Virus record (IMG/VR): IMGVR_UViG_3300027816_000051
Location: 186,001-250,000 of that record
Length of the DNA: 64,000 bases
Strand: one strand, 5' to 3'
The translations under genes and the position numbers were made by a program. Under the pieces are notes generated by a model. It made no database searches, was not told where the DNA came from, and saw only the letters and a program-made list of their open reading frames with translations. Positions 24,185 through 49,697 of the stretch are shown here, in pieces. Within the stretch, counting starts at the first letter, position 1; the number at the start of each line of letters is the position of its first letter.

Positions 24185-24976
24185 TCATACACGTCTCGTG
24201 TCGTCAATAAAAATTCTTACGTTGTGTTTCTCCCTGAACTTTTTTTCTAACTTATCAATAATATTATCTTGTAAGTTATAGGGGAAATCGGGACTACCTT
24301 TTTCGATACCATCTATGGTTTTAAATTTTGAATCAATGAACGGAATTAAATCTTTTTCATTTTTTATATCTTTTTTCCCGCGTACCACAACTCTAATAAC
24401 TGGGTTGTCTACGAGTTCATACTCATGGTCATCTATCTTTCCTTTTTTATATACGGTGTAATACACCGTCGCTCTCTTTATTAAAATTTTTATCCACTCA
24501 TCCATTTGGTCAAAAAACTTAGGTAATACATCTTGAGGTAATACAAGGGAATATTGGCCAGACAAAATGTACTGTATTGTTGGATTATCATACCTGAGGT
24601 GATTGGTATAATTTCTGTCAAACGATTCTTCTAATAAATCAATAATTAAAGGTCCGTTAATAAGGTGAAGTGACCTTATACTTAACTTGAACGGAAATTC
24701 ACCGAACCCAATCTCTTGAATTTTTCTGCCAACCAAAATGTAGATGTCATTAATCATCTCAGGATAAACCCTGTTAACATCAACAAATAGTTTCAATAGA
24801 CATTCACTTATAAAAGGGACACCATCTATTGTTCCTTGGGTTGGGTCTTCAGCTACAACATATTTTATTGTAATGGTCCCATCGGTCAGTCCTTTAAGTG
24901 AGTCACCTATTTGTGGTAAAGCGTCGTGAAACTTTTGGACATCATCACCTTCTAAAGTTTCTGTTAGTTTAATCAT
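24185..24976 (-). CDS. Hypothetical protein (probable start MIKLTE)
   Basis: TATTTATA on the sense strand just upstream of ATG 24976. Confidence 0.6.
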   Translation of the reverse strand: MIKLTETLEGDDVQKFHDALPQIGDSLKGLTDGTITIKYVVAEDPTQGTIDGVPFISECLLKLFVDVNRVYPEMINDIYILVGRKIQEIGFGEFPFKLSIRSLHLINGPLIIDLLEESFDRNYTNHLRYDNPTIQYILSGQYSLVLPQDVLPKFFDQMDEWIKILIKRATVYYTVYKKGKIDDHEYELVDNPVIRVVVRGKKDIKNEKDLIPFIDSKFKTIDGIEKGSPDFPYNLQDNIIDKLEKKFREKHNVRIFIDDTRRV

Positions 24977-25274
24977 CTCATTTACTTTACATATAAATAC
25001 CATTCCCCCGCCAAACTAAATCGACCTCCTCAGGTCCCTGAACTAACAAGTGTTAGTTAGTTTGTGCCAAACAAAATCGGTACCGTCGGACGATTCTGAG
25101 GATTCTGATTCCGCCAAACTAAATCGGTGGATTTATTGTTACAACATCAATTGTCTAAACAACCTTTCCGCCAAACTAAATTGACCATCTCAGGTCCCGT
25201 CGTCAGGATTCTCATTAAAAAAAAAATCCCGTGACGTTAATCACAGGATTTGGTTAAGAGACTTGAGTCGTCTA

Positions 25275-25544
25275 TTACATATTACTCAAGATACTCTTAC
25301 GGAACTCGAAAGCTTTCTTCTTGGAGGAGAAGTTCTGAGAGTAACGGGTTCCGTTAACGCTAGCACGTACACGGTAAGAGAAACCATCATAGTAGATGTG
25401 GTGTGAAACAGGTACGTAAGTACTTACGGTTGTTTTCATAGCCGGAGCTGCTACTGCTTTCTTCCCACCCTTTTTGGGGGCTGGAGCTGGTTTCGCCGCT
25501 GGTTTGCTGGCGGGTTTTTTAGTTGTGGACTTCTTTGTTGCCAT
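25275..25544 (-). CDS. Small basic protein: K/A/P-rich histone-like tail plus AP2-like DNA-binding domain
   Basis: MATKKSTTKKPASKPAAKPAPAPKK then HIYYDGFSYRVRASVNGTRYSQNFSSKKKAFEFR (three beta-strands plus helix pattern). Confidence 0.55.
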   Translation of the reverse strand: MATKKSTTKKPASKPAAKPAPAPKKGGKKAVAAPAMKTTVSTYVPVSHHIYYDGFSYRVRASVNGTRYSQNFSSKKKAFEFRKSILSNM

Positions 25545-25633
25545 AATATATTGATTTTGATATATAAAATATACACAAGAAAATCCTAAAAACCAAATCC
25601 TATAAAAAAATCTTTCAAAGAACTAATGCCAAA

Positions 25634-25954
25634 CTAAATCCACAGTATGATTCCCTCCTCAGGGTTATCAGGGTACCGTGACTCTTCTAAACATACACCA
25701 CATGTGGATGGTAATAATTGCTGCTTACCTTTTATTCCATCTACCTGAAATTGCGATAGAGGTGCTGGTATACTGAATCCACATATGTGACACTCTAACC
25801 TATATACGTTTAACTCACCCTTCCAATATAAATCAGTCAAGTTGAATTTCTTTCCCATCACTACGTTGTCATTAACGTCGGTAATGGTGTCTTCTATTAT
25901 TTCACCTGTGGTAGGGTCCGTGAAGTATACCTTGTCCCTGATGAAGAGTTTCAT
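25634..25954 (-). CDS. Hypothetical zinc-ribbon protein
   Basis: CHICG and CGVC; TAG stop lies inside a GCCAAACTAAAT motif. Confidence 0.6.
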   Translation of the reverse strand: MKLFIRDKVYFTDPTTGEIIEDTITDVNDNVVMGKKFNLTDLYWKGELNVYRLECHICGFSIPAPLSQFQVDGIKGKQQLLPSTCGVCLEESRYPDNPEEGIILWI

Positions 25955-26123
25955 TTACTCTTCCCCCTTTCTTCCAAACGTTGCAAATATTGTGAAAACA
26001 TCTTGGCCGCCATTGCTAACCTTTGAGGTTTAAAACAATATTTCTTATTAAGTCTAGCCATTGCTATCCTCATGAACTGTTCCTGAATCCGTGGTTCTAC
26101 TACTATCATGACTTTAAATATTG

Positions 26124-26585
26124 CTACAGGTGAGTATTGAATACATCAAAATCCCTAATTCCCATATTTTGTCTCTCCACTCTTGCGTTGTGCTGTAAAA
26201 ACGCTTGAATACCTTCACCGTGTGGTACGGCTTGAAATATTAGTTGCTGTTTAAATTGCTCTGAAGTAATAACTCGAACAACAGACAGTCCAAGTAATCT
26301 CATCCAAAATGGTTCGTCGACCATTACAGATTTAATCCTGAAATAGTTCACAGATTCTCGAGTCACACTGAAGACCCCTTTTCGTTCAATTACACAGTCA
26401 TCATAGAATTCATACCTCCAACAATCTACTTCGAAATATTTGTAGATATAGATGACTACCGCCAATGCACATGCATATGGGTGTACGAAGTAAGTTGCTG
26501 GTACCATGGCCAGCCAACCAATATTCAACCACTGAGATGGGGTGAATATGTGAATCGGTTCTTGAGGTTTCTGTGTATTGAACAT
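26124..26585 (-). CDS. Membrane protein with bacterial PH (bPH_2) domain
   Basis: Two TMs, then YEFYDDCVIERKGVFS..RIKSV..PFWMRLLGL. Confidence 0.75.
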   Translation of the reverse strand: MFNTQKPQEPIHIFTPSQWLNIGWLAMVPATYFVHPYACALAVVIYIYKYFEVDCWRYEFYDDCVIERKGVFSVTRESVNYFRIKSVMVDEPFWMRLLGLSVVRVITSEQFKQQLIFQAVPHGEGIQAFLQHNARVERQNMGIRDFDVFNTHL

Positions 26586-26589
26586 AATA

Positions 26590-26880: not shown

Positions 26881-26904
26881 AACTCCAAATCTAAATAAAA
26901 TTTA

Positions 26905-27507: not shown

Positions 27508-27598
27508 ACACCTATTGATTTTTAATGTTCTATATTCAAAATTAATACATTTACTAGAATATTCCAAATTTTTCTAGAATATTTTTGCCAATCTAAAT

Positions 27599-29902: not shown

Positions 29903-30205
29903 TTATTGATTTAAGATGTTAAACAATTTTGTACCAAGACCAAATAACTTTTCGGCCTTATCTTCTCTTTTTCCTTCACTACACACGTAGATTGACTTAT
30001 CAGGTAGAACACCCAAATCCAACATTCCAAATGTGTGTTCCCATTTACCATTGATGAATTGTTCACCTGTAAACCTTTCTTGTGCGTTGTACGCTTCGTA
30101 GGTCATTTTCAATTTGACATTATTCTCATTTTGAATAATTCTCATCTCATATGACTTATCTCTCAAGTGAGATGATACCGAGTGGATTACTTTTTCTTTT
30201 TTCAT
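29903..30205 (-). CDS. Hypothetical protein (probably leaderless)
   Basis: ATG lies 4 nt after TATCTTTG. Confidence 0.6.
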   Translation of the reverse strand: MKKEKVIHSVSSHLRDKSYEMRIIQNENNVKLKMTYEAYNAQERFTGEQFINGKWEHTFGMLDLGVLPDKSIYVCSEGKREDKAEKLFGLGTKLFNILNQ

Positions 30206-30265
30206 AATACAAAGATATAACAATTTTTCTTTTATACCAAATTTATTTTCAACTTTGTTGCCAAA

Positions 30266-30577
30266 CTAAATGTCCTCGACGGTAAAGTCATCCGACTCAA
30301 GGATGTCTATGATGTGTGCGAGTTCATATATGTCCAATTCAACTAACGAGAGTTCTATACTATCACCAAAACTTTCCGACATCACAGTACCATCAGGTAA
30401 TATTCCATACGCCGCGTATTGAACTCTACCATCATCTTCGTACATACCTTCGGTAACCCAAACTCCAAACACATTTCTAAATGTGATTTGTTGGTTCTCA
30501 CCAATAATGGTCGAACATTTGTTTTTAATTTTTTTGATTATTTCCTCTTGTAGGTCTTGAATTTTTTTCTTGTACAT
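30266..30577 (-). CDS. Hypothetical protein
   Basis: Own promoter; TAG stop inside the motif. Confidence 0.65.
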   Translation of the reverse strand: MYKKKIQDLQEEIIKKIKNKCSTIIGENQQITFRNVFGVWVTEGMYEDDGRVQYAAYGILPDGTVMSESFGDSIELSLVELDIYELAHIIDILESDDFTVEDI

Positions 30578-30699
30578 AATAAAATGTTTTAGTAATACAA
30601 AGATATAACAATTTTTCTTTTATACCAAATTTATTTTCAACTTTGTTGCCAACCTAAATCAATGTCCATCCCATAATATATGTGTACGAGGTTTTTAAT

Positions 30700-30725: not shown

Positions 30726-30740
30726 CTCTCCTTAAACCAA

Positions 30741-31331: not shown

Positions 31332-31410
31332 ACTTTTTTAATTTAATTGTATTACAAAGATATAACAATTTTTCTTTTATACCAAATTTTTTTTCAACTT
31401 TGTCGCCAAA

Positions 31411-31887
31411 CTAAATCCCCCCTGTGAATATGGGGTTTGGTCTGAACTCCAATTTGTACTTTGGGTTGTAACTACCACCCGAACAATTGCTACATGAATA
31501 AGACCTACTTCTTAAACGATGGGCTTTGGATACCTTACCACAACCAACACATGTTGCAATATATTTTGCTTCGGGTGTTTCAACTACTTTACTACTATAA
31601 CAACGATGTCCATCACAACCTATTTCAATCGCTTTCGACCTCCATACATGGTTATGTTTTTGACCAGGACAAAGTGCGTGTGCAATCTCATGTAGAATAG
31701 TATTCTTTACATGACTTTCATCATTAAGTAATGTCAATACTTTGGATAGTGTAATTTGTTTAGGTCTGTATTTACAACACCCAAACCTACTTTTTGCATT
31801 GTCATACGCAAATGTCCACCCCTTAACATCTAACTTGTGTTTGTGAATTAACTTCTCTGCTAACCGTTGTGCTTTAATTAAGTCCAT
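31411..31887 (-). CDS. SprT-like zinc metalloprotease
   Basis: FGCC, ILHEIAHAL, HNHVW, C-terminal CxxC pairs. Confidence 0.85.
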   Translation of the reverse strand: MDLIKAQRLAEKLIHKHKLDVKGWTFAYDNAKSRFGCCKYRPKQITLSKVLTLLNDESHVKNTILHEIAHALCPGQKHNHVWRSKAIEIGCDGHRCYSSKVVETPEAKYIATCVGCGKVSKAHRLRSRSYSCSNCSGGSYNPKYKLEFRPNPIFTGGI

Positions 31888-32348: not shown

Positions 32349-32392
32349 TGTTTTTTTGCCAAACAAAAATCCCCCTGTGACGGGGGACCTTT

Positions 32393-32995: not shown

Positions 32996-33270
32996 TGTTA
33001 TGTTGTTTTATGATACAAATATAATACTGTTATTATTATATTCCAAATAATTTTTTATCTTTTTTATTGTTTTCTTGCCAACCAAGTTTTTGGATTAACC
33101 AGGGTCACCAGCAAAATGACCAGTAAAACTGGCTGTTGCAACCAGTCTGAAGCCAGGTGATTTTGGTTGGCACAACTTAAAGTGTTGATTTTATTAGGAT
33201 TACAGAATGCCAAACAAAATTCCGATGACCAGCATCATGCGCGCAACATCTTCAAGCAATAAAAAACCCC

Positions 33271-34041: not shown

Positions 34042-34272
34042 ATAATATTGGTTTAACAATACAAATATAAAACGAATTCTTTTATATTCCAAATTTATTT
34101 TTATTTTTTTTCTTCAGGAGGGACCTGTTCTTCCCAGGGCGATATTGTTTGGCGGGCGCCAAACTAATTTAATAGACGAACTGTGCAGCTCCTCCGCACA
34201 CATTCGAGCAATAAAAAACCCCCACATTTCTGTGAGGGTTTTTCGAACCGAACATTAAATCAATATACTAAA

Positions 34273-34650
34273 CTAAAGAACCCCTTCTATTGAATGTCCC
34301 TTTTTGGTGAGGTTTTTACCTTTACGTTCATAGTTGTTGTAGCCAACCAAAAACAAATCGTCTTTGGTCCCTAACACCATCGAACCTTCAAGTTTCATTC
34401 CACCATAAGTTACTTTCAGCTTACGCATAAAATCATTGAAAGAACGCTCAAGCTGTACACCAATCTTATCGGTAGGAGGAACTGGTGCATTTTCAATGTG
34501 ATAACGAGTACCAACACGAGAAAATTTAATTCCCACCATTTCCTTTTTCTCAAAGTTTGGTAAACTCTCATTAAGGCATTCACGAATTTCGTGCAAAGAC
34601 TTCTTCAGAGAATTAGCCGTAGTCTTTCTTGGTTTTTTTATCATATTCAA
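34273..34650 (-). CDS. Basic hypothetical protein
   Basis: Cassette with own promoter and terminator. Confidence 0.55.
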   Translation of the reverse strand: MNMIKKPRKTTANSLKKSLHEIRECLNESLPNFEKKEMVGIKFSRVGTRYHIENAPVPPTDKIGVQLERSFNDFMRKLKVTYGGMKLEGSMVLGTKDDLFLVGYNNYERKGKNLTKKGHSIEGVL

Positions 34651-34899
34651 GTTTTTGAATTACAGTACAAAAGTAATAAGAATATTTTCGATAAACAACA
34701 AATATTTTCACTTTGTTCAACTTTTTTGTCAAAACCTTATACAAAAAGTGTCTTTTTTATTGGATTACAAACATTTGTGTGTTGAAAACTCCGCCAAACA
34801 AAATCTGGAGTCGTCTTCAGGATGTTACATCTTGTGAAATTTTGAGCAAAAAAAAGGGGTAACCTTTCGGTCACCCCAATCACTAACCCTAATCCAAAG

Positions 34900-35655
34900 T
34901 TAGAAACGAAGGTTCAACTTGTCCTCATTACGACGCTTGTAGTTGTAAATGTCTTCAATCATTTCCGCGTATGATTTTTTATCACCACACATATAGATTG
35001 AACTTGGACGAAGTTTTACTTTATGTAAAAATTCTTCAAACTTAAAATCGGGTTTCTTTTCCATAATGGTAAGAATAGTACGAACAAATACCGATTTGTT
35101 GTAACCCTTTTCAAAGTAAGGTTTCAGTTGGAGTAGGTTATTCGCCCATTCTTTGGCGGTTTCCATATTACCAACAACAAACTTACCATCCGCAAAATCT
35201 TGTTTGTCACAATGACGAGTACCAGAATTTTGTAGTAACATAATTCTTTCGGTCAAAGAAAACATCGGAAACTCTTTTGAAAAATCTTCCAAAGTTTTGT
35301 AAGATTTGTTTCCTTGTTCGGAAAAACCATGAATGTAATCTTTCTTACCCCACTCTTTCATGTTCTGGTTGAACTTACGTGCGGCTTCAAAGATACCTTT
35401 CGTGGTGTTGGGGATTGAGTTGTCTACAATAAAGTAGATACCTTTACCCGCTTCTTTTGCTGCGGTTAGTCGGTGTTGTCCGTCTACAACCACATACTGG
35501 GAGTTTACAATGATTGGAACGAGTTTTAATCCGTCCTTCTTCATCGAGTCTGTAATACGCTTAACGCGTGGAGAGTCTACCTCACGATTTACATTGTGAA
35601 GTTTGAACATACCCAAATTTTGGGTGAACTTTACTTGAACATTTTTTGTACTCAT
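34900..35655 (-). CDS. ParB-N/Srx domain protein
   Basis: NREVD, PIIVN, VVDGQHRLTA. Confidence 0.8.
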   Translation of the reverse strand: MSTKNVQVKFTQNLGMFKLHNVNREVDSPRVKRITDSMKKDGLKLVPIIVNSQYVVVDGQHRLTAAKEAGKGIYFIVDNSIPNTTKGIFEAARKFNQNMKEWGKKDYIHGFSEQGNKSYKTLEDFSKEFPMFSLTERIMLLQNSGTRHCDKQDFADGKFVVGNMETAKEWANNLLQLKPYFEKGYNKSVFVRTILTIMEKKPDFKFEEFLHKVKLRPSSIYMCGDKKSYAEMIEDIYNYKRRNEDKLNLRF

Positions 35656-37102: not shown

Positions 37103-37244
37103 TGTCTTGTCGTTTTATAATACAAATATAAATCAGTAATTAATATAATCCAAATATTTTTTTATTTTTCTTGCCAATCTAATTTCCGTCCTGAACCGTG
37201 ACTCAGAGTCCTGAGAAATAAAAAAACCCCTTTCGGGGTTTCTC

Positions 37245-38667: not shown

Positions 38668-38687
38668 TTCTTTTACTTTTTAATTGT

Positions 38688-39341
38688 TTACATATCACTT
38701 TCAGTCAATACCAAAAATTGTCTTGTTAGTGAAACGAATAATGTGTTATCTACAATTTTAGGTAATACATCACTATCCACTTCTTCTGTGTTGAATTGAA
38801 ACCAATCCTCTTGTTCGCCGTCTGCGTTTTCAAATTCGTGGTTCTCAACAACATCAGTAATCTTTTCCAATAATGTATCAGAAATCTGTTCTTCCTCATC
38901 ATTGAGAATACAATCACCTTTGTAGTTAATTGAACTTCCGTCTTGACTGCCAACCAAATTAAGGACTTTGGTTCTAATAAACTCAACCTCTTTTTCTGTG
39001 AGTTCAACAACAACTTCTTCTGTAAAACTCTCTGACCATTCCGCCTGTGCAGATTTGTAATACGAGAAAGTGGGGTTTTCCTCATCATCTTCATCAAGTG
39101 TAATCTCAACACTTCCAAATTCACCAATGTAGTGTCCGTCAGAGTTCACATAAAATTCTACTCTACGGAAAACATCATCATCAAAGAAACTATCAAGTTC
39201 ACCACTCTCAACATCTTTGTTTTCTGAATTGTAAAAATTAAAGTGATAATCATTCATACTATCACCACCACAACTAAATTCCATAGTTGCGCTTGTAATA
39301 CCTAACTCTTTCCAGAGTGCGATTGCTTCATTAGTTTGCAT
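38688..39341 (-). CDS. Acidic protein, DUF6878-like
   Basis: GITSATMEFSCGGDS N-terminus. Confidence 0.5.
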   Translation of the reverse strand: MQTNEAIALWKELGITSATMEFSCGGDSMNDYHFNFYNSENKDVESGELDSFFDDDVFRRVEFYVNSDGHYIGEFGSVEITLDEDDEENPTFSYYKSAQAEWSESFTEEVVVELTEKEVEFIRTKVLNLVGSQDGSSINYKGDCILNDEEEQISDTLLEKITDVVENHEFENADGEQEDWFQFNTEEVDSDVLPKIVDNTLFVSLTRQFLVLTESDM

Positions 39342-39735
39342 ATTCGTGGATTTTTTGGTTTAATTGTTTAACTACTTCGTACGCTTCGGGGTTGTCTAAA
39401 TCTTTTACCCCATTACACATCCAGGGTTGAACCTCTAAATGTTTAAGGTAATCTTGTGGGGTTGGAACGAACTTCATTCTAAAATCTTCTGCGATATGTA
39501 ACATCGCAATATCAACAACATCAACTGACTTACCATCACTATTAGTAATGTTGTAACCGAAGATTTTTGGAATGATAGTGTATGCGAACCAAGTGTTGTG
39601 GGTGAGTAACCGAGAACTATTATTGTTCATTGTCGCTTTCGGACTATCAATAAGTTCGTGGATAGGTAAATAATCTTCTACCTTACCACCCCAACGCTTG
39701 ACGCTGCTCTTTGAGTGAATTAGTGGGTTCGCCAT
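39331..39735 (-). CDS. DUF6915-like protein
   Basis: MANPLIHSKSSVKRWGGKVEDYLPIH..DS, HIAED, VPTPQD. Confidence 0.65.
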   Translation of the reverse strand: MANPLIHSKSSVKRWGGKVEDYLPIHELIDSPKATMNNNSSRLLTHNTWFAYTIIPKIFGYNITNSDGKSVDVVDIAMLHIAEDFRMKFVPTPQDYLKHLEVQPWMCNGVKDLDNPEAYEVVKQLNQKIHEYAN

Positions 39736-39737
39736 AG

Positions 39738-40016
39738 TTAATCCCAAATTTGAGTGATAGTACCTTCAAACGGATTGTACTCAACTTGTTTTCCCATAAC
39801 CCAATCACCTTGCTCAACTTTGAGTGGTTTGTGTTCGTTTGAGAAACTTCCATCGGGTTGTTCGTGTCTTAATACACTATCCTTTCTAACTTCAACTTCT
39901 GCGAAATCTGTTTGTGTTTCATCAACAATGAAATCACCATACAGAGTGTGCTGGTTAACACCCTCACCCTTTAAGAGTGTGTGTTTTTTCTTCGGAGTTA
40001 CTTTCTTGTTTTTCAT
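39738..40016 (-). CDS. Small His-containing conserved protein
   Basis: GEGVNQH, LRHE, EH, QVEYNP. Confidence 0.55.
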   Translation of the reverse strand: MKNKKVTPKKKHTLLKGEGVNQHTLYGDFIVDETQTDFAEVEVRKDSVLRHEQPDGSFSNEHKPLKVEQGDWVMGKQVEYNPFEGTITQIWD

Positions 40017-40776
40017 TTTTAGATTGTTTTATGGTACAAATATAAATCTATTTTTTGTATAAGTGAATTTTTTTTTTATTTTTTTCGCCAAACAAAAATC
40101 ACCCGTGAAGGTGATTTCGTCATTCGTTTCGTACAATATCTAATAGGTCATTCACAATTTCTTTTTTGGTTAATGAAAGAAGTTGATTACCTCTGAACGA
40201 CAACAACTTAAAGGTATTCATTCCTTTAATACCTTTTTCACCCTCTACATAGTAATCCATTTTCCACTTACCCAAATACTTAACATTCCCTATGTGTTTT
40301 ACATAGTAGACATTACCGATAGTTAGTTTTTCTAAAACCATATAAATTAATTTAGAACACAAATATAAATCTATATTTTGTATAATCCAAATTTATTTTT
40401 ATATTTCTTGCCAAACAAAAGTTATCCTGTGCTGCATCATCACCATCTTGGATACTTATTATTATGATAGAAGGGATACTTTATACATTAGGAGTTGAGT
40501 TCGTATTAGTCATTATATTGTTTTGTTATGAGTTAAGAAGACAACTAAAAGAAGATTATCAAGAGAAACCATTTAGATTCTGGGAAGATACATGAACATC
40601 TCCTGGTTGCGCGCAGCCCTCGATTTTGGTTGGCTCGAACCCAAAGTATTGATTTTATTGGGTTTAGAGTTTGCCAAACAATTTTCACTGTTTGCGCGTA
40701 GCTCACCATCAACTTTGGAGCAATAAAAAACCCCACATTTCTGTGGGGTTCTTATTAATTGAGTACCTAACCAATC

Positions 40777-41631
40777 TTAAACCAACTCAACCAATTCTTT
40801 GAAAATTTGACGTTCCCTTTGTCCATAGGTTCCAAACATCTTGTTTTCAGAGTTATCACCTTTACTTAAGGAATGTGTGGTGTACTTAGTAACCCCACTG
40901 AACAATCCCCAAAGGTTATCACCTTTCTCTTTTACTTCACCATTAAGGTCTACGTAGAAACGAGAAAGACGATTACGAGTCACGGTCGACACATCTTTGT
41001 CACTATTCAAATCAACATCTTTCATGATATTGAACAATGTACGTGTAACCCAATCCTCTTGTTTCTTGGTCATCTTCGTTTCAGAAAGTTTCTTAATGTC
41101 TTCGAACATTTCTTTTTCTTCCACGAGTACCCCCTCCAAACCACGACAGATATCATCGATTCTCATCTCCATGTTTTTGGTGTGACGAATTTTCGCATTC
41201 AAGTTACGGAACGCTGCGAAGAATGAATTCTGACAACTGATTGTAATATTACTTGGACCGAATGCCAAACTAGTTGACCCATCGAAGGAATTCACACCAG
41301 TGATGAAACCCTCAACTCTGTCATTGCCCAATTTCAAATCATTTGATTTCAATTGAAGGTATACTTTCTCACCCCCACCAAAGTAACCACCTTTGTGAAT
41401 TGGTAAACCAACCTGTTGAGATACCTTGTCTAGTAAATCAACCATCTGATGATTTTGATAAGGAAAGTAACCATCACCATGTACAGACAAAACAGTGTTT
41501 GTGTCCTCACGGATGATTGCTTTACTCTTAGGAACAATGATACCACTTTCTGTAGTGATACTTTCTTCTCTTACGGTCCAATTTAGGCCGACTTTGTTGA
41601 GAACTTGCTGTGTGCGATTTTCTTGTGACAT
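40777..41631 (-). CDS. DUF932/DUF945 family protein
   Basis: GLNWTV, YQN, NSFDGS, CQN, IRHT, LWGLFSGVTKYTTH. Confidence 0.8.
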   Translation of the reverse strand: MSQENRTQQVLNKVGLNWTVREESITTESGIIVPKSKAIIREDTNTVLSVHGDGYFPYQNHQMVDLLDKVSQQVGLPIHKGGYFGGGEKVYLQLKSNDLKLGNDRVEGFITGVNSFDGSTSLAFGPSNITISCQNSFFAAFRNLNAKIRHTKNMEMRIDDICRGLEGVLVEEKEMFEDIKKLSETKMTKKQEDWVTRTLFNIMKDVDLNSDKDVSTVTRNRLSRFYVDLNGEVKEKGDNLWGLFSGVTKYTTHSLSKGDNSENKMFGTYGQRERQIFKELVELV

Positions 41632-42035
41632 ATGGATGTTTTTTAATTTGATACAAATGTAATACACTTTTCATTATAATCCAAATAAATCTTTATTTTT
41701 TTTTTCTGACCCCAGAATTCACCGTACCATCTCAGAAATTGGTTGGCATCTGTCATACACCCGCCAAACTAAATTGAACACGGGATTTGCCGGCGACGAA
41801 TTTTTTTAGCAAACAAAAAACCCCCACATTTCTGTGAGGGTTCCTTAACCAAATAAAACTAATCTATGAACGACAAATCAAGTGTATTACACTTTAACCA
41901 AATATAGGAATTAAAACAAACATTGTCAATAGGAAAAACATAAGTATTACAATGCCACCCAAAATTCCATCCCAAAATTCCTTTCGGTCTTCTTGGTAAA
42001 CTTCTTTGAAAGTTGAAAACATTTCCTTTAACATA

Positions 42036-42395: not shown

Positions 42396-42488
42396 TTTTT
42401 GTTTTTTTAATTATTGGACAAATATACAAATGAATTTTTGGAATATACAAACGATTGTGCCAATCAAAATCGGCGGTTCACCATCTCC

Positions 42489-42734
42489 TCAGATATTTCC
42501 CGAAAAGACAAGAAAATTGTTGGGTGGTAAATAAGTGTCGGGAGTGTCAATGATTTCATATTCATCTTCACCCTCAACTACACCAAGAGTCCTACCACTA
42601 TCCCAACGGACATTGATAACACCATGACCAACATGATAAATTGTTCCCATTGAACCTTCCTCAACGGGGTTAGGGTCGTTCTCCATTGAAACGAGACGAA
42701 TTCTTTTTCCGATTAATTTTTCGTTTATTTTCAT
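42489..42734 (-). CDS. DUF4314 family protein
   Basis: RIRLVSMENDPNPVEEGSMGTI..VRWDSGRTLG. Confidence 0.75.
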   Translation of the reverse strand: MKINEKLIGKRIRLVSMENDPNPVEEGSMGTIYHVGHGVINVRWDSGRTLGVVEGEDEYEIIDTPDTYLPPNNFLVFSGNI

Positions 42735-42809
42735 ATCTGTATTAGTTTATTAATACAAATATACAACTTATTTTATGATATCCAAATTTTTTTTAGGATA
42801 TTTTGCCAA

Positions 42810-43115
42810 TCAAATTGATGTCAATCTGAATATTCGTTTGAACTCTTTTTCAATTCTTCTGAATCTTATTTCGTCTTTTTCTCTAACATAACGCGATATT
42901 GTTTTGTTAAATTGAAAGTTAGAACGAGTAAGAAGATAGATAAATTTTCTCCTCTCCACTTTGTGACCTTCAAAGTTGTATGCCCATTCAACATCAACCG
43001 AAATATAATTTTCAGTTTCAATGATGTCACACACTTTACCTTCTTTTTCCGATTTTTTTAGGTAGTTCATTACTTCCTCATCGGTATTCAATGATATGTC
43101 GTTATAGTTTTTCAT
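42810..43115 (-). CDS. Hypothetical protein (probably leaderless)
   Basis: ATG 4 nt after TATATTTG; TGA stop inside the motif at 42805. Confidence 0.6.
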   Translation of the reverse strand: MKNYNDISLNTDEEVMNYLKKSEKEGKVCDIIETENYISVDVEWAYNFEGHKVERRKFIYLLTRSNFQFNKTISRYVREKDEIRFRRIEKEFKRIFRLTSI

Positions 43116-43350
43116 AATACAAATATACAATTCATTTTATGATATCCAAATTTATTTTAAAATATCCAATAACACCATCTACTGTTTCACCCGGCGTCGT
43201 AAAAATTTTGGTTGGCTGACCACATAAAACACTTAAATATAATAGGTTATCCGCCAAACAAAATCCCCACCAGGCGTGGGCTGGGCGAATTCTGGTATAA
43301 AAAAAAATCCCCGACTTTCGCCGAGGACTTTTCACCTAACCAAACAAAAT

Positions 43351-43758
43351 CTATTCGTATTCTTCTGCGTACAATTCACCCGTGAGGTACATGTCGTAAG
43401 TTTTTACTTCACCCTCCAACACTTCGGTTACTTTGTCAATAAGACTTTGGGTAATTTTCTTTACTCCATATTCTTCACGGACTTTCTTCTTTGAAACAAA
43501 GTACCAACCAACTTGTCCACTATCCCAACGACAACTGAACGGACTTGTGTTCATTGTAATTCCCGAGTGGTCGTACAAGTAAAGAGGTAAGATAACACAA
43601 ACATCTTCTTCTTTGATGATTGCGTTTTTCATTTCTTCCCAACCATTGTAGTTATTGTGGTTGTAGTCGTGTTTGTCTCCAAGGTCGTAACGTCCGTGAA
43701 AACACACCATTTTTCCGAGGTTGTCCCAACTCCGTGGGTTGTCAAAATCTTGATACAT
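43351..43758 (-). CDS. Conserved phage hypothetical protein
   Basis: PRSWDNLG, LPLYLYDHSGIT, WDSGQVG, YLTGE. Confidence 0.7.
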   Translation of the reverse strand: MYQDFDNPRSWDNLGKMVCFHGRYDLGDKHDYNHNNYNGWEEMKNAIIKEEDVCVILPLYLYDHSGITMNTSPFSCRWDSGQVGWYFVSKKKVREEYGVKKITQSLIDKVTEVLEGEVKTYDMYLTGELYAEEYE

Positions 43759-44367
43759 AGTCGTTATTATTTATTGGTTTATACAAATATATAACAATTT
43801 TATTCGTTTACCAAATCTTTTTTGCCAAACTTTATTCGTCTGTACGCCTTCGCCGAAGGTTTCGACTTCTGTAACATTTTCCTACGGACTATTTGTGCGA
43901 CGTGTCTCACACTTAATCCATTAAGGGTTTCATTCTTCATAGTTAAATTCGGTTTCATCTTCTATTTCTTTAAGTTTTTGTTCAAACTCATTTCTCATTT
44001 CATCGGTATCAAAGATTGGTTGTTTAGTTTCATCATCAATGTAATAGTAAACACCGACTTTGATTTCCGTTGGGATTGATTTCTTACTCATAGTAATTAT
44101 GTATTACGATACAAATATAAAACTATATTCAGTATAATCCAAATTTTTTTTCATACCTGTCGTCTCCATCCCACAAATTGTTTGGCGTGTTGTTTAATGT
44201 TTTGACCGAAAGATTAAACAAAACATATAGTGTAATACGCCTTTATTGAGTGTCATACAGTGCCAACCAAATTTAGGATACAGCACGTGCTGTGAGGTGA
44301 AACTAAAACGCAACAAAAAAGGGTAACATTTCTGCTACCCTTTTCCACCGCAACCGAGTTAAACCAA

Positions 44368-44916: not shown

Positions 44917-45552
44917 TATTTTGTCGATTTTATGATACAAAGATATAACGAGTTTTTTATTCTACCAAATTTATTTTTATTTTTCTTGCCAACTAACCAA
45001 ATAGTAACTTACCATTCGGTAACATCTCAGAACCGCTGCGTCGGGAAAATTTTGGTTGGCGTTCTTACAATCTGTAAAGTAAAAACCTACTAATCTGTAA
45101 AGTGGATGCCAAACAATTTTCACCCTGAACCGTGACTCAGGACTTCAGGTCATAAAAAAACCCCAACTTTCGTTGAGGTCTTGTCTTTACTCTTCTTCAC
45201 TATCCCGAAAAATTTGAATCGCTTCGTTGAACAATTCATTCTGTAATTGAAATAGTGTATATCCACTCTTAATACATTCATCTACCCAATCATTATCACC
45301 TTCAAAAATTCCTTCCCAACTTCTATTCGGTGGTAAACCCATTTCGTTTTCGGTTTGAATATGTTGGTAAATTAAACCAACAACTTCTTGTCTTGTCATT
45401 TTAATTAGTTTTGGTGAAACACAAAGATAAAACATTTTTTCGTATAATCCAAATTTTTTTATATCTTTCTTGCCAACCAATTTTCACCCTGAACCGTGAC
45501 TCAAGTTCTTCAGGTCATAAAAAAACCCCCACCTTTCGGTGAGGGTTCGTTG

Positions 45553-45855
45553 TTAAAAAACTTCGGGTTCAAACTCAATTTGTGGGATACCCAATAGTTC
45601 GTAATCATCAAATTCCCCCCAATCGGGTTCATTGAAATAACGAAAACGGACATCCATAGTTCCATCTTCGTTCCACCAAATACGGACTTGGGTTCGGTGG
45701 TCGGAAATAAAAAACCCTTCAAGTTGTTCCAACTTCTCAATTAGAGGTTGAACATCCGAATCGTCAATAGTTACTTCTTCGTTATTAACGAGGAAATCAT
45801 CAACACATTCACAATTACCATCGTAGTCGATAGAGAAATCAATGTACTTTTCCAT
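45553..45855 (-). CDS. Acidic hypothetical protein
   Basis: Cassette with promoter and terminator. Confidence 0.6.
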   Translation of the reverse strand: MEKYIDFSIDYDGNCECVDDFLVNNEEVTIDDSDVQPLIEKLEQLEGFFISDHRTQVRIWWNEDGTMDVRFRYFNEPDWGEFDDYELLGIPQIEFEPEVF

Positions 45856-46144
45856 TTTGTTTTTTTTGTTTTATTGGTTTAACAATACAAATATAAATCA
45901 AATTTTAATATACACAACATTTGAGTATATTTTTTTTTATCTATTTTGCCAAACTACCACGAAACAGATGACCACCTGTCGTCAAATCCGAAAAATTGTT
46001 TGGCGTAGGTGTAATACAATGTATGATAGTGTCATACAACGCCAACCAAAATTCCGAGCTGCAACTGTGCAGCTCCACTGCACACATCCGAGCAAAAAAA
46101 ATCCCCGACTTTCGCCGAGGACTTTCCACCTAACTAAACCAAAC

Positions 46145-46519
46145 CTAATATGAACCAAACCTTTCTTTTAACGCCACGTCAAACGCGGACATAAATGTTA
46201 CTTGTTCTTTGACTTCTTCAAGTGAAAGTTTGGTATCACCATTTTCACCCGTTTCATCATCGTAACCCATTATCAACCCATTACCCGATAGAGGTTGTCG
46301 GTAATTTTTCAACTTGAAAAACTTTGTGTTTTCATCAACACTCATTATACCTTCTTCATCAACATACACATCGTTTTCGTTGTTGTAACTAACAATCTCA
46401 AAAATAGAACACTTTAAGTGTCCATAGATACTTGGTAACTGACTACCAGTTTCATCACGAACAACTTCAACTTCGGAAATTGTTTTGTTTTCTACGTCGA
46501 TTAAAATTCCTCTTGACAT
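46145..46519 (-). CDS. DUF3846-like protein
   Basis: DVYVDEEG, PLSGNGLIMG. Confidence 0.6.
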   Translation of the reverse strand: MSRGILIDVENKTISEVEVVRDETGSQLPSIYGHLKCSIFEIVSYNNENDVYVDEEGIMSVDENTKFFKLKNYRQPLSGNGLIMGYDDETGENGDTKLSLEEVKEQVTFMSAFDVALKERFGSY

Positions 46520-46614
46520 TTCTTTTTTGTTTTATTGGTTTAACGATACAAATATAATACTATTTCTTTTATATTCCAAATCTTTTTTTGCCAATCAAAT
46601 TCCAACATCTCCCG

Positions 46615-47980
46615 TCAGGAGGTCAGGTATTTCTTGTCTTTGACAAATTTGAGGTGTCTACATTCCTCAATAGTCAATCCCACAAATTCGTTGGGAGTGA
46701 AACTGATTTCATCGGGATAGTAGTCGAACAAAAATTCTTCTTGTCCATTTTCCATTGTAACCCACACTTGGGGCATCGGGTCGAACAAACTCTTTGGTTG
46801 TTCCGTAATACGAGATGAGATAACTTTCATGATTTTGTCTATTGGTTTAACTATACAAATATAAAACTATTTTTCTTATATACCAAATTTATTTTTATTT
46901 TTCTCAGAACCGTCGTCCGTATCCAAAAATTGGTTGGCGTAGGTGTAATACGATACTCACTATTTGTCATACGGCGCCAAACAATTTTCCTTCAGGGCCC
47001 TGACTCAAGTCCTGAAATGTTCACCTTATCAATAAGGGAAACAAATAAAAAACCCCCACCATTACTGATGAGGGTTAGTCTGAACCAACAAACTAAATTC
47101 AATTTAAACAAAGATTTTTCATAAGGTCGGAAACTTGGTAAGGTTTATAAAAATCAAAAACCTCTTGATGTTTTTCATCGGTTACAAAATTGTGGAACTC
47201 AACATTCAAAACGCCCTTGTCAAAGGTTGTTTCAACACTACACAAAATTTCGTGTCCATCCCTTTCAATGATTTGTGGAACAACTCGGTCGTACACCATT
47301 CTACCGATTGGGTCGTTTGGTACTGGTCCACCACCAACACCATACTCGGTTTCCCCTTCTTCGTTTACTTTTTTCAAAAGGTACATTTTTACATTGGGTA
47401 CACTATCGTTTGTTCCCAACATTTCTTCGGTACTCACTTTTGCGGAGTGTGTCATTCCTTGAATAAAATCTCTGATTTCTTCAATGTCTTTGTAATTGTT
47501 CATACTTGTTCTTTTTATTTGGTTTAACAATACGAATATAATATGATTAAACGGATATTCCAAATAAATTTATATTTTTTTTGCCAACTTACGATACAAG
47601 ATGTCGAGGGACAGAAGACGGATTTTGATTTTTGGTTGGCGAGCGTAATACGATAATACCAATGTGTAATACCCCGCCAAACAATTTTCTACGCTGCTCA
47701 AATCCACCACAGAACCTCGTGTAAATAAAAAACCCCCAACTTTCGTTGAGGGTTAATTACCATTTTGGAATTTTTAGAACCTTTGAGGTTGTGGTTTCTT
47801 TTTACTCTTGATGTAATTTTTGATGTCCTCAAACAAAATGATAAAGAACATACCAATACCCATACAAGAAAATAAGAACATACCCATTTGATTGTCTACG
47901 GGAATATCCCAAGTTAATGATACCCACATTGAGTAAACAATGAACCCGATGATTGCGATGTAAGGAAATAACTTTTTCAT
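46615..47980 (-). other. Three single-gene cassettes (46615-46830, 47099-47503, 47774-47980; the last is a two-TM protein)
   Basis: Each has its own -33/-7 promoter. Confidence 0.6.
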
Positions 47981-48078
47981 AATTGTTTCTTTTGTTTGGT
48001 TTAACGATACAAATATAATATAAGTTTCAATATAAACAACATTTTTTTATATCTATTTTGCCAACTTGATAACACCAA

Positions 48079-48276
48079 CAACTTCTCCTTCGAGCAACAG
48101 CGCATGGTTGGAAATTAGATTGGCGGTTTTAGCAACACCTAAAGCATTTAGCAACTTCTCCTTCGAGCAATTGCGCATGAGGGAAATTAGATTGGCGGTT
48201 TTAGCAACACCTAAAGCATTTAGCAACTTCTCCTTCGAGCAATTGCGCATGAGGGAAATTAGATTGGCGGTTTTAG
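48079..48276. repeat. 72-bp tandem repeat, about 2.7 copies
   Basis: Unit caacttctccttcgagcaattgcgcatgagggaaattagattggcggttttagcaacacctaaagcatttag starts at 48079 (variant), 48152 and 48224. Confidence 0.95.
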
Positions 48277-48479
48277 TCCGTGTCGGCGCATTTGCAACAA
48301 ACTCGCCAAACAATATCTAACAGCGCAGCCCGGGTGAAATTCTGTTCCCAAATTTTTTCTTACTTTTTTTATTCGTTCCCGCCAAACAACATTCCCGATG
48401 GTTCACGGGGTTCGGAAAATTTCACACACAAAAAAAGGGGATACTTTCGTACCCCCTTCGGTTTTTCTTTCGGTGTGTG

Positions 48480-49043
48480 TTACTCCTTTACAATTTCGTA
48501 CCTATCTCCGTTTACCGAAATTTCAAGTACATTGTCAAGGTCGGGTGTTATCGGTTTAACCTCTCTATCCAAACCTTGTTTTTCGTTACTACTCTTTCTA
48601 TCACTTATCCACTTTTCAAACAATGTTTTGTCTATTGAGTTACCACGAAATTCGTACTCCGTTGTTCCTTTGATTTCGGGAAACCACTCTACCATAAGGT
48701 AGGTTTTTGTTTCGGTGTCGGTGTCAGTCAGTAATGATTTACTGATATGTTTTTTACCCGTTGGACTTTCAACCTTAAAGGTGTTCGGGTCTTTACCCTC
48801 TTTCATAAGGTTGTTGTGTACCCTCTTTTCGTAGTCAGTTACCAAACGATAAGTTTTAGATGATACCTTAAAGATTTCCTTATAGTAAGGGTTTAATTCT
48901 TTGGTGTCCTTTGTCTTTTGTAAAACTTCTTTGTAAAGGGTTTTCATTTTTACCCCTACAAAAGTGTTAGGACTTTTTTCCTCAATCTCTTTGATGATAC
49001 TGATGATTTCGGACTTCGTTACTTTTTTGATTTCTTTGTTCAT
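48480..49043 (-). CDS. Hypothetical protein
   Basis: Cassette with promoter and terminator; NPY, DYEKRV motifs. Confidence 0.65.
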   Translation of the reverse strand: MNKEIKKVTKSEIISIIKEIEEKSPNTFVGVKMKTLYKEVLQKTKDTKELNPYYKEIFKVSSKTYRLVTDYEKRVHNNLMKEGKDPNTFKVESPTGKKHISKSLLTDTDTETKTYLMVEWFPEIKGTTEYEFRGNSIDKTLFEKWISDRKSSNEKQGLDREVKPITPDLDNVLEISVNGDRYEIVKE

Positions 49044-49304
49044 ACTTTTATTTTTTAGTTTGTTAGGAATACACAAATATAAAACACTATTTCATATAAA
49101 CAAAACTTTTTTTTATTTATTTCGCCAGACTACCACGAACCCGATGACCACCTGTCGTCCGTATCCGAAAATTGGTTGGCGAGTCGGTGCAATTATGGTC
49201 TATTCGCCAATCAAATTTCCACCTGAACCATCTCCTCAAGTTCACACAAATCTTCTTGGACAAAAAAAATCCCCACCTTTCGGTGAGGACTTTCGGTGTG
49301 GTGT

Positions 49305-49562
49305 TTAATCTTCTTCACCCTCTTCAATTCCCGACATTACAACTTCGGTCAAGTGATTAACAAAGGTTTCGTACAACTTGTAATCCAACATAACCTTTTG
49401 TCTTGTGTGTACAAGGGTTACGTTCTTTTCGTTTTTTTCATCGTACAACTCATTTGTTAGGTCATTCGTGAAATCAGTACCATTCCACTCGTAGTCAATT
49501 TGGTTTGACAATAACTGGTCAATTTTACTTTTAACCAAGTTTTTAACTTTTTGTGTGTCCAT
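49305..49562 (-). CDS. Hypothetical protein (first gene of the - strand block)
   Basis: TATCTTTG upstream, terminator downstream. Confidence 0.6.
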   Translation of the reverse strand: MDTQKVKNLVKSKIDQLLSNQIDYEWNGTDFTNDLTNELYDEKNEKNVTLVHTRQKVMLDYKLYETFVNHLTEVVMSGIEEGEED

Positions 49563-49697
49563 ATTTTTATTAATTGGTTTGTGGGTACAAAGATATAACA
49601 ATTTTAAAATAATACAAGTGAAAGTTATTCACATCCTGAATGTGGATTTTGACCACCCTGAACCTGACGACCCCCATCCCACAAATTGTTTGGCATA

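What the first reader, a model, noticed from the sequence alone, without database searches (positions are those of the whole stretch)
24557..49694. A 25-kb genomic domain marked by about 70 oriented copies of an unknown 12-bp site (GCCARHCWAAWT)
Seen: the motif (e.g. GCCAAACTAAAT, GCCAAACAAAAT, GCCAACCAAATT, GCCAATCAAATT) recurs with gaps of at most about 1.1 kb from 24.5 to 49.7 kb. This coincides with the - strand block of cassette genes. I found no good match in the other ~39 kb. About 55 copies point one way; reverse copies occur only from 33.1 kb onward and become denser toward 49.7 kb. Inference: a sequence-specific DNA-binding protein coats this one domain, probably the early/first-expressed region. 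It could act as a regulon operator, an architectural or protective factor, or an entry signal. I do not recognise it as a described system.
Basis: partly seen in the sequence, partly recalled or inferred. Interest (0 to 1): 0.92.

Follow-up and report, generated by a model that had tools for sequence, protein, structure and literature searches.

The report
Phage promoter box marking accessory-gene domain
A 12-bp oriented DNA box really does mark one 25-kb block of small accessory genes in an uncultivated jumbo phage of Bacteroidota; it sits at fixed helical phase upstream of about 20 host-type promoters and is most likely the operator of a small phage-encoded DNA-binding protein.

Summary
The stated pattern has 39 exact matches against 0.2 expected. 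A weight matrix finds about 68 sites, all between 24.5 and 49.7 kb, with 52 in one orientation and 16 in the other. One weak hit lies outside.

In gene sense (- strand) the box reads ATTTWGDTTGGC. The domain is a chain of autonomous cassettes, each with a Bacteroidota-type promoter (TTTG / TAnnTTTG), one to four genes and an intrinsic terminator. The box lies upstream of the promoters. The gaps to the -7 element are 31-33, 41-44, 52-55 or 64 nt and nothing in between (44 promoters, 9 genomes, period 10.7 bp). Identical promoters outside the domain lack the box.

Further copies follow terminators, form inverted pairs, or form arrays. Related uncultivated phages keep the architecture, but the box sequence differs by lineage (TTTGGC, TCTGGA, CTGGGC, ACYGGC). 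This points to a co-evolving phage-encoded reader.

The best candidate reader is an 89-aa protein (25275-25544, - strand) with a basic tail and an arm-type/AP2-like fold. Its gene always closes the domain and is flanked by boxes. Binding and the direction of regulation are untested. I class this as a new variant of known kinds (L5 stoperators, T4 PeSL cassettes).

The parts
24185..49694 (-). Accessory-gene domain. It holds about 45 small - strand genes in autonomous cassettes, about 25 Bacteroidota-type promoters, many intrinsic terminators and about 68 boxes.
25275..25544 (-). Candidate box reader. An 89-aa protein with a K/A/P-rich tail (residues 1-40) and a conserved beta-sheet-plus-helix domain (residues 44-87).
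   Evidence: The gene closes the domain in every lineage looked at.
25010..25181 (+). Array of four same-orientation boxes (25010, 25066, 25113, 25170), just downstream of the candidate reader gene and upstream of the 272-aa gene at 24185-25003.
   Evidence: The array is kept in relative L031.
25628..25639 (+). Box upstream of the candidate reader gene's own promoter, 54 nt from the -7 element. The TAG stop of ORF 25634-25954 lies inside the box.
27587..27598 (+). Promoter-proximal box, 42 nt from the -7 element.
30191..30271 (-). 81-bp box-plus-promoter module, copy 1 of 3. The gene-sense 5' edge of the repeat is the box itself.
   Evidence: (family D2)
30579..30659 (-). Box-plus-promoter module, copy 2, 89% identical to copy 1.
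31336..31416 (-). Box-plus-promoter module, copy 3. The three cassettes between these modules are absent from relative L084.
32358..32369 (+). Promoter-proximal box 33 nt from the -7 element. At the orthologous promoter in L084 the gap is 43 nt, one helical turn more.
33077..33220 (.). Triad. Upstream box 33209, inverted box 33160 (36-nt spacer holding a WATCAANNNNTTR word) and promoter-proximal box 33077 (53 nt from the -7 element).
   Evidence: (D9)
34142..34169 (.). Inverted pair with a 4-nt spacer.
36335..37184 (+). Two promoter-proximal boxes (36335 at 31 nt, 37173 at 42 nt) and one intragenic copy (36929) that L084 does not keep.
37724..37887 (.). Triad: 37876, inverted 37828, and promoter-proximal 37724 (42 nt).
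40087..40684 (.). Box 40087 (42 nt from a -7 element), box 40410 (42 nt), and the inverted pair 40623/40673.
41736..41774 (.). Inverted pair with a 15-nt spacer that holds GTATGACA.
42459..43835 (.). Promoter-proximal boxes 42459 (32 nt), 42805 (41 nt) and 43824 (32 nt), plus the inverted pair 43205/43253.
45049..46601 (.). Pairs 45049/45108 and 45993/46041. Promoter-proximal boxes 45472 (42 nt) and 46590 (33 nt).
46927..47687 (.). Pairs 46927/46976 and 47629/47676. Their spacers hold two GTATKACA words about 21 nt apart.
   Evidence: D13, D14
48079..48392 (.). A 72-bp tandem repeat (2.7 copies), each unit carrying a reverse box (48113, 48185, 48257), followed by forward boxes 48305 and 48381.
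   Evidence: (D10). A near-identical contig has one unit fewer (L119).
49169..49694 (.). Pair 49169/49206 and a lone reverse box at 49683 at the upstream edge of the domain, next to a G-rich stretch.
   Evidence: The arrangement is kept in L084.
34342..41275 (+). Span holding six intragenic copies (34342, 36929, 38082, 38301, 38949, 41264) that are mostly lost at the orthologous positions of relatives.
37929..37957 (-). Example of the intrinsic terminators that precede the boxes. Others are at 33264-33286, 34856-34877, 45523-45548, 47051-47076, 47731-47754 and 48434-48459.
   Evidence: (30 found against 12.5 expected)

Best explanation
The box (gene sense ATTTWGDTTGGC) is the operator of a trans-acting, sequence-specific DNA-binding protein that controls, as one regulon, the roughly 25 host-sigma-type promoters of a hyperplastic accessory-gene domain in a Bacteroidota jumbo phage.

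Shown: one box sits upstream of most of these promoters on a fixed face of the helix. With T-12 of the -7 element as reference, box centres fall near -50, -60, -71 and -82. An A-rich tract lies between the box and the -33 element. Extra boxes lie after terminators, in inverted pairs 50-200 bp upstream of promoters, and in arrays at the distal end of the domain.

Inferred: The most likely reader is the 89-aa protein encoded at 25275-25544. It has a basic histone-like tail and an arm-type/AP2-like domain, and it would bind each asymmetric box as a monomer. Its gene belongs to the regulon and is flanked by boxes, and the promoters are already near consensus. I therefore think feedback repression (shut-off of this gene set, possibly helped by roadblock sites after terminators) is somewhat more likely than activation.

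The repeated box-plus-promoter modules also serve as homology for gain, loss and reshuffling of cassettes.
For: Enrichment and confinement to the domain.
Anatomy (terminator, spacer, box, A-tract, -33, -7, start codon).
Promoter consensus and numbering for Bacteroidota: PMC6847099.
Spacing from box to -7 element in 44 promoters of 9 genomes: 31-33 (11), 41-44 (25), 52-55 (7), 64 (1), none between. Best period 10.7 bp, resultant length 0.90.
An orthologous promoter pair differs by one turn.
A lineage with the box inverted still shows 45-46 and 56 nt.
Five consensus promoters outside the domain have no box.
Intergenic boxes are kept in relatives of 68-76% nucleotide identity while the flanks diverge or gap. 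They are also kept in L099, whose proteins are only 35-59% identical.
Box variants by lineage, with the same architecture.
Candidate reader: 120 homologues without Pfam family; invariant YRVR / G / K..A..R columns; AlphaFold pLDDT about 90 for four strands plus a helix; best PDB fold hits are integrase arm-type domains 3jtz and 3rmp_C, and ApiAP2 domains; nearest named Atlas clusters are Integrase_DNA, Arm-DNA-bind_4 and Integrase_N_phage.
The gene is at or next to the distal end of the domain and has boxes within about 150-400 bp in all ten lineages checked; in most of them they form clusters on one or both sides.
Against: No binding, transcription or timing data exist. Everything rests on sequence.
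The fold matches are not significant (Foldseek E about 0.5, Atlas scores 0.83-0.87, no Pfam or PDB sequence hit).
A residue-level covariation idea failed. Homologues with HH or NN at positions 48-49 share the same TCTGGA box, and a TTTGGC box occurs with several protein subtypes.
About half of the boxes are not promoter-proximal.
Twelve boxes are intragenic, and several of these are not conserved.
Phasing could partly reflect common descent of promoter modules.
Only 64 kb of a genome of about 230-290 kb was seen, so confinement to this domain is not shown genome-wide.
Upstream phased sites are classically activator positions, which argues against my preference for repression.
Confidence: 0.6

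Rival explanations
1. The boxes are stoperator-like silencers. A repressor binds the asymmetric boxes and mainly blocks elongating RNA polymerase at cassette junctions, so that the whole domain is silenced. The promoter-proximal copies would be ordinary operators.
For: The site is asymmetric, about 12 bp, present in dozens of copies and strongly biased in orientation with transcription (52:16). Many copies lie in short intergenic spaces, after terminators, or over stop codons. Arrays lie at the distal end of the domain. The box consensus differs by lineage, as in Cluster A immunity groups. The L5 system is described in PMC9283540.
Against: The boxes are confined to one domain rather than spread over the genome. 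No HTH or gp71-like repressor and no integrase was found in the window. One lineage (L145) has the box inverted relative to transcription and keeps the same architecture. The strict helical phasing to promoters is not explained by a roadblock.
Confidence: 0.25
2. There is no dedicated reader. The box is only the conserved edge of a mobile terminator/promoter module (PeSL-like). It is kept by duplication and gene conversion, and it matters only as homology for cassette shuffling.
For: There are 24 copies of a promoter module. Three 81-bp copies, 89-100% identical, begin exactly at the box. Cassettes are present, absent or reordered between relatives. PeSL precedent: PMC2839356 and PMC4122927.
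Against: The box is conserved where the rest of the module has diverged. It occurs without any promoter: after terminators, in arrays and in inverted pairs. It is placed in three or four discrete phase classes with unrelated spacer sequences. It has changed in concert at all sites within each lineage.
Confidence: 0.12
3. The boxes are arm-type or core sites of a site-specific recombination system that captures and excises cassettes, like an integron. The 89-aa protein would be an accessory factor.
For: The boxes lie at cassette borders and gene content is mosaic. Inverted pairs flank a word that matches the IHF consensus I recall from memory. The candidate protein resembles integrase arm-binding domains.
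Against: No recombinase was found in the window by Pfam. The cassettes carry their own promoters and terminators. The box does not fit RYYYAAC / GTTRRRY. Most boxes are single, not paired. Phasing to promoters is unexplained. Repeated 81-bp modules suffice for homologous exchange.
Confidence: 0.06
4. The boxes are a polar DNA signal read along the duplex: Chi-like protection, a translocase or ejection guide, or a packaging signal.
For: The strand bias is strong and the boxes are confined to one block.
Against: Strand bias cannot be separated from gene orientation in this block. The sites cluster in intergenic regions at fixed distances from promoters. They come in inverted pairs. One lineage has the opposite orientation relative to the genes.
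Confidence: 0.03
5. The inverted pairs act as RNA or single-strand DNA hairpins.
For: Twelve pairs have 12-nt arms.
Against: In 9 of the 11 window pairs compared, one arm has A and the other C at position 6. That gives a mismatch on either strand. In relatives the outer halves of the arms fit the W-rich consensus but are not complementary. Spacers range from 4 to 47 nt. Most boxes are unpaired and lie between a terminator and a promoter. Rfam finds nothing.
Confidence: 0.03

Closest known systems
Operator/stoperator sites of the L5-type immunity repressor in Cluster A mycobacteriophages (PMC9283540)
   Same: Both have an asymmetric 12-13 bp site read (there, shown) by a monomer. Both have dozens of copies, mostly in promoters and short intergenic spaces. 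Orientation is tied to the direction of transcription. The consensus differs between related phages.
   Different: Here the sites are confined to one 25-kb domain of a jumbo phage of Bacteroidota. They are phase-locked upstream of promoters rather than overlapping them, and they often come as inverted pairs. No HTH repressor or integrase was seen. The candidate reader has a different, arm-type/AP2-like fold. Function is untested.
PeSL (promoter-early stem-loop) cassettes of hyperplastic regions in T4-like phages (PMC2839356, PMC4122927)
   Same: Small genes of unknown function are each bracketed by a conserved composite of terminator and host-type early promoter. These composites are repeated many times in a plastic region, with gain, loss and exchange of cassettes between relatives.
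   Different: The promoters are of the Bacteroidota TTTG/TAnnTTTG type. The composite carries an extra, strongly conserved 12-bp box that also occurs apart from promoters and varies by lineage. PeSLs have no such separate operator.
Class I activator-dependent promoters (CRP at -61.5, -71.5, -82.5; MarA/SoxS marboxes); from established knowledge, not tested here
   Same: The upstream site is restricted to positions one helical turn apart. For MarA/SoxS the site is asymmetric, is read by a monomer, and its orientation matters.
   Different: There is no CRP- or AraC-family protein here. The promoters are already near consensus.
Phage phi29 p4 with the histone-like p6 (early-to-late switch); from my own knowledge
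   Same: A small phage protein binds upstream of strong host-type early promoters and works together with a DNA-coating activity to repress them. Here the candidate protein joins a specific domain to a basic, histone-like tail.
   Different: phi29 has a handful of sites and two separate proteins. There is no sequence or fold relation.
Integron attC arrays
   Same: A one-directional array of small cassettes is separated by a recurring site that sometimes overlaps stop codons.
   Different: No integrase was found in the window. The cassettes have their own promoters and terminators. The site lacks the attC core sequences and structure.

Membership tests
L5-type stoperator system | Many copies of an asymmetric site of about 13 bp in promoters and short intergenic spaces | tested here: met
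   About 68 copies of a 12-bp asymmetric box, about 56 of them intergenic or at gene junctions. They lie in one domain only.
L5-type stoperator system | Site orientation follows the direction of transcription | tested here: inconclusive
   The ratio is 52:16 in the window. The minority copies are systematic inverted partners, and lineage L145 has the opposite orientation.
L5-type stoperator system | Reader is a gp71-type repressor (N-terminal HTH plus stoperator domain) of a temperate phage | tested here: not met
   No HTH, gp71-like or integrase family was found in any window ORF by Pfam. The rest of the genome was not seen.
L5-type stoperator system | The bound site stops elongating RNA polymerase | not testable with these tools
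   Needs transcription assays.
PeSL cassettes (T4-like hyperplastic regions) | Composite of a terminator stem-loop and a host-type early promoter repeated between small ORFs | tested here: met
   24 promoter modules and an excess of - strand terminators. The promoter type is that of Bacteroidota.
PeSL cassettes (T4-like hyperplastic regions) | Indels and replacements between related phages are bounded by the composites | tested here: inconclusive
   Cassette-level presence, absence and reordering are seen, and repeated 81-bp modules flank the variable cassettes. Exact junctions could not be resolved at 70% identity.
Integron (attC array) | Adjacent IntI tyrosine recombinase and attI | tested here: not met
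   No Phage_integrase hit in the window. The ORF at the upstream edge (49993-50610) is a zincin-like peptidase.
Integron (attC array) | attC with RYYYAAC ... GTTRRRY cores forming an imperfect palindrome after each promoterless ORF | tested here: not met
   The core GCCAAHC / GDTTGGC departs from both. Only 12 of about 45 junctions have inverted pairs. The cassettes have their own promoters.
Class I activator site | Site centres spaced by whole helical turns upstream of the core promoter | tested here: met
   Spacing classes are 31-33, 41-44, 52-55 and 64 nt, with period 10.7 bp.
   No expression data.
Arm-type / AP2-like DNA-binding domain (for the 89-aa protein) | Three-stranded antiparallel sheet packed on a C-terminal helix | tested here: met
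   In the AlphaFold model, strands are at 44-47, 50-52, 57-63 and 66-72 and a helix at 75-87, with pLDDT about 90.
Arm-type / AP2-like DNA-binding domain (for the 89-aa protein) | Significant sequence or structure similarity to known members | tested here: inconclusive
   The top Foldseek hits are 3jtz and 3rmp_C (arm-type) and 3igm and 6sy0 (AP2), but with E of 0.5-2. Atlas neighbours score 0.83-0.87. There is no Pfam or PDB sequence match.

The most novel reading that the evidence does not exclude
A free-standing relative of the integrase arm-binding (AP2-like) domain, fused to a histone-like tail, acts as master regulator of a whole anti-defence or host-takeover gene domain in lytic jumbo phages. 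It reads oriented boxes at every cassette. Protein and box have diversified into specificity groups, so related co-infecting phages could silence or spare each other's accessory arsenal. That would be an immunity-like system outside lysogeny, and the same boxes would guide cassette exchange.
Probability: 0.15. Interest if true: 0.8.

Novelty: new variant of a known kind. Interest (0 to 1): 0.6.

Why it matters
Almost nothing is known about gene regulation in phages of Bacteroidota, least of all the large uncultivated freshwater ones. This finding offers three things. It gives a concrete regulon that can be recognised by sequence: box, promoter, terminator and a candidate regulator. It marks the plastic domain that holds the likely host-takeover and anti-defence genes. 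It also extends two ideas to a new phylum and phage type: the multi-copy asymmetric operator known from mycobacteriophages, and the mobile promoter-terminator cassette known from T4-like phages.

Tried and rejected
- Megablast of 44 kb of the window against GenBank phages found nothing. The nearest isolates share only about 36% helicase identity (Bacteroides phages DAC/SJC), and the first 50 kb of DAC22 has no box.
- There are no tRNAs and no Rfam family.
- Scanning IMG/VR for the paired pattern gave mostly chance single hits. Only loci with three or more boxes were used.
- A sigma-70 consensus scan is uninformative here: 71 found against 66 expected. The promoters are of the Bacteroidota type.
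- A sigma-54 or long-spacer sigma-70 reading of TTGGC(A) was rejected by eye, because the spacing to any -10/-12 element does not fit (from sequences).
- Pfam over about 110 ORFs found no HTH, recombinase or ParB-HTH protein. The ParB/DUF262-like ORF 34900-35655 is a weak hit.
- The 272-aa gene behind the four-box array was dropped as a reader candidate, because it is not conserved across lineages.
- Residue-level covariation (HH at positions 48-49 with TTTGGC) is refuted by P0115/L149 and P0105/L151.
- A PDB sequence search with the family profile found nothing meaningful.
- The protein family is nearly absent from 185,579 species genomes. Three small lake MAG contigs carry it, so it is not a host regulator family.
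- A genome-wide scan for single boxes in the full-length contigs was not run.

Full report
OBSERVATION
All lie between 24557 and 49217. A weight matrix built from them and iterated finds 69 sites: 68 in 24557-49694 and one weak site at 12956. GCCAAAC alone occurs 30 times forward and 4 times reverse in the domain and never elsewhere. Fifty-two sites read on the + strand and 16 on the - strand. The first reverse copy is at 33160. The domain coincides with a block of - strand genes with reversed GC skew.

WHAT THE WINDOW IS
There is no close match among deposited phages. IMG/VR holds contigs of 115-288 kb with an identical helicase, plus more distant relatives. The nearest isolates are Bacteroides, Chryseobacterium and Flavobacterium phages, at 33-36% helicase identity. 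The flanks encode a helicase, an exonuclease, a phosphoesterase, glycosyltransferases and a cell-wall hydrolase. The promoters are of the Bacteroidota type, TTTG at -33 and TAnnTTTG at -7 (consensus and numbering from PMC6847099). I conclude that this is an uncultivated jumbo phage of a Bacteroidota host.

ANATOMY
In gene sense the box reads ATTTWGDTTGGC. Printing every intergenic region in that sense shows a recurring unit:
- stop codon;
- strong intrinsic terminator (30 found against 12.5 expected);
- a G+C-rich stretch of about 30 nt;
- the box;
- an A-rich tract;
- TTTGG;
- about 19 nt;
- TAtaTTTG;
- about 25 nt;
- start codon.

The promoter module occurs 24 times in the domain. The site classes are as follows:
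- 17 promoter-proximal;
- 12 inverted pairs, in which an upstream box and an inverted box lie 4-47 nt apart (mostly 36), usually 50-200 bp upstream of a further promoter-proximal box;
- a four-box array at 25010-25181;
- three reverse copies inside a 72-bp tandem repeat;
- 12 intragenic copies.

Four ORFs use the TAG inside the box as their stop codon.

PHASING
The gap between the last base of the box and T-12 of the -7 element was measured at 44 promoters in nine genomes. It is 31-33 nt at 11 promoters, 41-44 nt at 25, 52-55 nt at 7 and 64 nt at 1, with no value in between. The best period is 10.7 bp, with resultant length 0.90. A set thinned to one value per genome and class still gives 0.87. 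One orthologous promoter has 33 nt in the window and 43 nt in L084. Box centres therefore fall near -50, -60, -71 and -82. Five equally good promoters outside the domain (4149, 16630, 21412, 57408, 59777) have no box. This is the strongest evidence that the box is read together with RNA polymerase and defines a promoter class.

CONSERVATION AND PLASTICITY
Five loci from other contigs align to the domain at 68-76% identity (L031, L082, L084, L101, L109). L099 shares only four proteins, at 35-59% identity. All of them carry the box with the same anatomy.

At aligned positions, intergenic boxes are kept while the flanks diverge or gap. Six intragenic copies are mostly lost.

Gene content is mosaic at the level of cassettes. 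Blocks such as 37978-40362 and 30266-31887 are missing from L084, and gene order differs. The latter block is bracketed by 81-bp modules, 89-100% identical, whose edge is the box. This is the pattern described for PeSL cassettes of T4-like phages (PMC2839356, PMC4122927).

The genes themselves are typical accessory or establishment-type families: DUF932, DUF3846, DUF4314, DUF6915, SprT-like, GP88, L5 gp82-like, DUF1281_C, DUF4241 and bPH_2. That they are early genes is an inference, drawn from the dense host-type promoters.

A CANDIDATE READER
No ORF of the window has an HTH or recombinase family.

The 89-aa product of 25275-25544 has a Lys/Ala/Pro-rich tail and a conserved C-terminal domain of about 50 residues. 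It has 120 unnamed homologues, all metagenomic, with invariant Y..G.SYRVR..G..K..A..R columns. The AlphaFold model shows four strands and a helix at pLDDT about 90. The best PDB fold matches are arm-type DNA-binding domains of integrases (3jtz, 3rmp_C) and ApiAP2 domains, though at non-significant E-values. The Atlas's nearest named clusters are Integrase_DNA, Arm-DNA-bind_4 and Integrase_N_phage, which are leads only.

Contigs encoding divergent homologues were fetched. In every one, the gene is at or next to the distal end of a same-orientation accessory domain, the last or last-but-one gene in most, and boxes lie within about 150-400 bp of it, in most lineages as clusters on one or both sides. 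In the window, its own promoter has a box at the 54-nt class. The family is almost absent from 185,579 species genomes, so it is a phage family.

LINEAGE-SPECIFIC BOXES
In those contigs the most enriched oriented word differs from lineage to lineage, but it occupies the same places:

| Locus | Box in gene sense |
|---|---|
| window, L147, L150, L151 | ATTTWGTTTGGC |
| L141, L149 | ATTTAGTCTGGA |
| L143 | ATTTTGCTGGGC |
| L148 | ATTATGACTGGC |
| L146 | ATTATGACCGGC |
| L145 | GCCAAAGAATATT (the box inverted), still 45-46 or 56 nt from the -7 element |

 The promoter elements do not change. A concerted change at all sites of a genome points to a co-evolving trans-acting reader, not a conserved RNA polymerase subunit. 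A simple residue-to-base covariation (His48/His49 with TTTGGC) was tested and failed.

MECHANISM
Shown: the box is a conserved, lineage-specific element, phased to promoters, that marks this domain.

Inferred: a monomeric phage protein, probably the 89-aa arm-type-like protein, reads it. The regulator gene lies inside its own regulon and the promoters are near consensus. I therefore favour feedback shut-off, with post-terminator and array sites acting as roadblocks or cooperative anchors and the basic tail engaging the adjacent A-tract. Activation from class I-like positions remains a serious alternative.

Rivals considered, in order of weight:
- a stoperator-like roadblock as the main role;
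- a reader-less PeSL-type module;
- integron-like recombination;
- Chi-like or entry signals;
- hairpins.

Hairpins are disfavoured by systematic arm mismatches and non-complementary outer halves. Recombination is disfavoured by the lack of a recombinase and by the promoter phasing. Polar signals are disfavoured by the promoter-locked placement and by the inverted lineage.

COMPARISON AND NOVELTY
The system works most like the L5 operator/stoperator regulon (PMC9283540) laid over a PeSL-type cassette region. It fails the membership test for either family on reader type, distribution and promoter geometry. I found no description of it in the searched literature. It is a new variant of known kinds, in a phage group whose regulation is unexplored.

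LIMITS
Only 64 kb of the genome was examined. All functional statements are inferences from sequence. The fold assignment is suggestive, not significant.

Noticed in passing
window 41763-47687 (spacers of the inverted pairs), also 24458-24545; L143, L145, L148, L151: A second word, GTATGACA / GTATTACA, is enriched in the domain (GTAATAC 19 forward and 5 reverse, against 3 and 2 outside). It usually lies 2-5 nt from a box core, sometimes as two copies about 21 nt apart. It is also the next most enriched word in distant lineages whose box differs. It may be a second factor's site or an extension of the box.
   Followed up: partly
window 33172-33208, 37840-37875, 40635-40672; L031 about 11215-11250, L109 about 2935-2968, L099 about 1556-1591: One family of inverted pairs has, at its centre, an A/T tract followed by AATCAA-N4-TTR. 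This matches the E. coli IHF consensus WATCAANNNNTTR as I recall it. It is kept even in L099, which has no nucleotide similarity to the window otherwise. It may be a bending site between two boxes.
   Followed up: no
window 48079-48276: A 72-bp tandem repeat (2.7 copies, 96% matches), each unit carrying a reverse box. One reading frame stays open through the repeat. A near-identical IMG/VR contig (L119) is 72 bp shorter here, so copy number varies in nature.
   Followed up: partly
window 49602-49992: The large divergent intergenic region at the upstream edge of the domain has a G-rich stretch with repeated GGGGGTAT-like words next to the lone reverse box, then an A/T-rich part with repeated TTTTCAGATTTTTT words. 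The G-rich part next to a box is kept in L084 (near its position 270).
   Followed up: no
window 25634-25636, 30266-30268, 31411-31413, 31909-31911: Four ORFs end at the TAG that lies inside the box. In this way a coding sequence can abut a box-promoter module directly, without a terminator.
   Followed up: partly
window 6110-15117: Outside the domain, a + strand run encodes a class I/II aminotransferase, a UvrD-like helicase, a 2OG-Fe(II) oxygenase-like protein, a metallophosphoesterase and a family 2 glycosyltransferase. NUDIX and MGS-like hits lie somewhere among the small ORFs. This could be a nucleotide or DNA-modification gene set.
   Followed up: no
window 49993-50610 (+) and 50613-52196 (-): A zincin-like peptidase (Peptidase_M54 / reprolysin-like hits) is encoded divergently from the domain. 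Next to it is a 527-aa ORF with no family in Pfam or PHROGs.
   Followed up: no
alignment A1 (54 small ORFs of the window): One unidentified member gave a weak hit to the CBASS inhibitor family Acb3 (E 0.0075), and another to baseplate gp6_C. Which ORFs these are was not determined.
   Followed up: no
window 34179-34228 and 46063-46112: The G+C-rich stretch between terminator and box is itself a repeated family (86% identical copies). It has overlapping short palindromes (TGTGCAG...CTGCACA, GAGCTGCA...TGCAGCTC). Other spacers share CTGAGG / GACGAC words. Function unknown.
   Followed up: no
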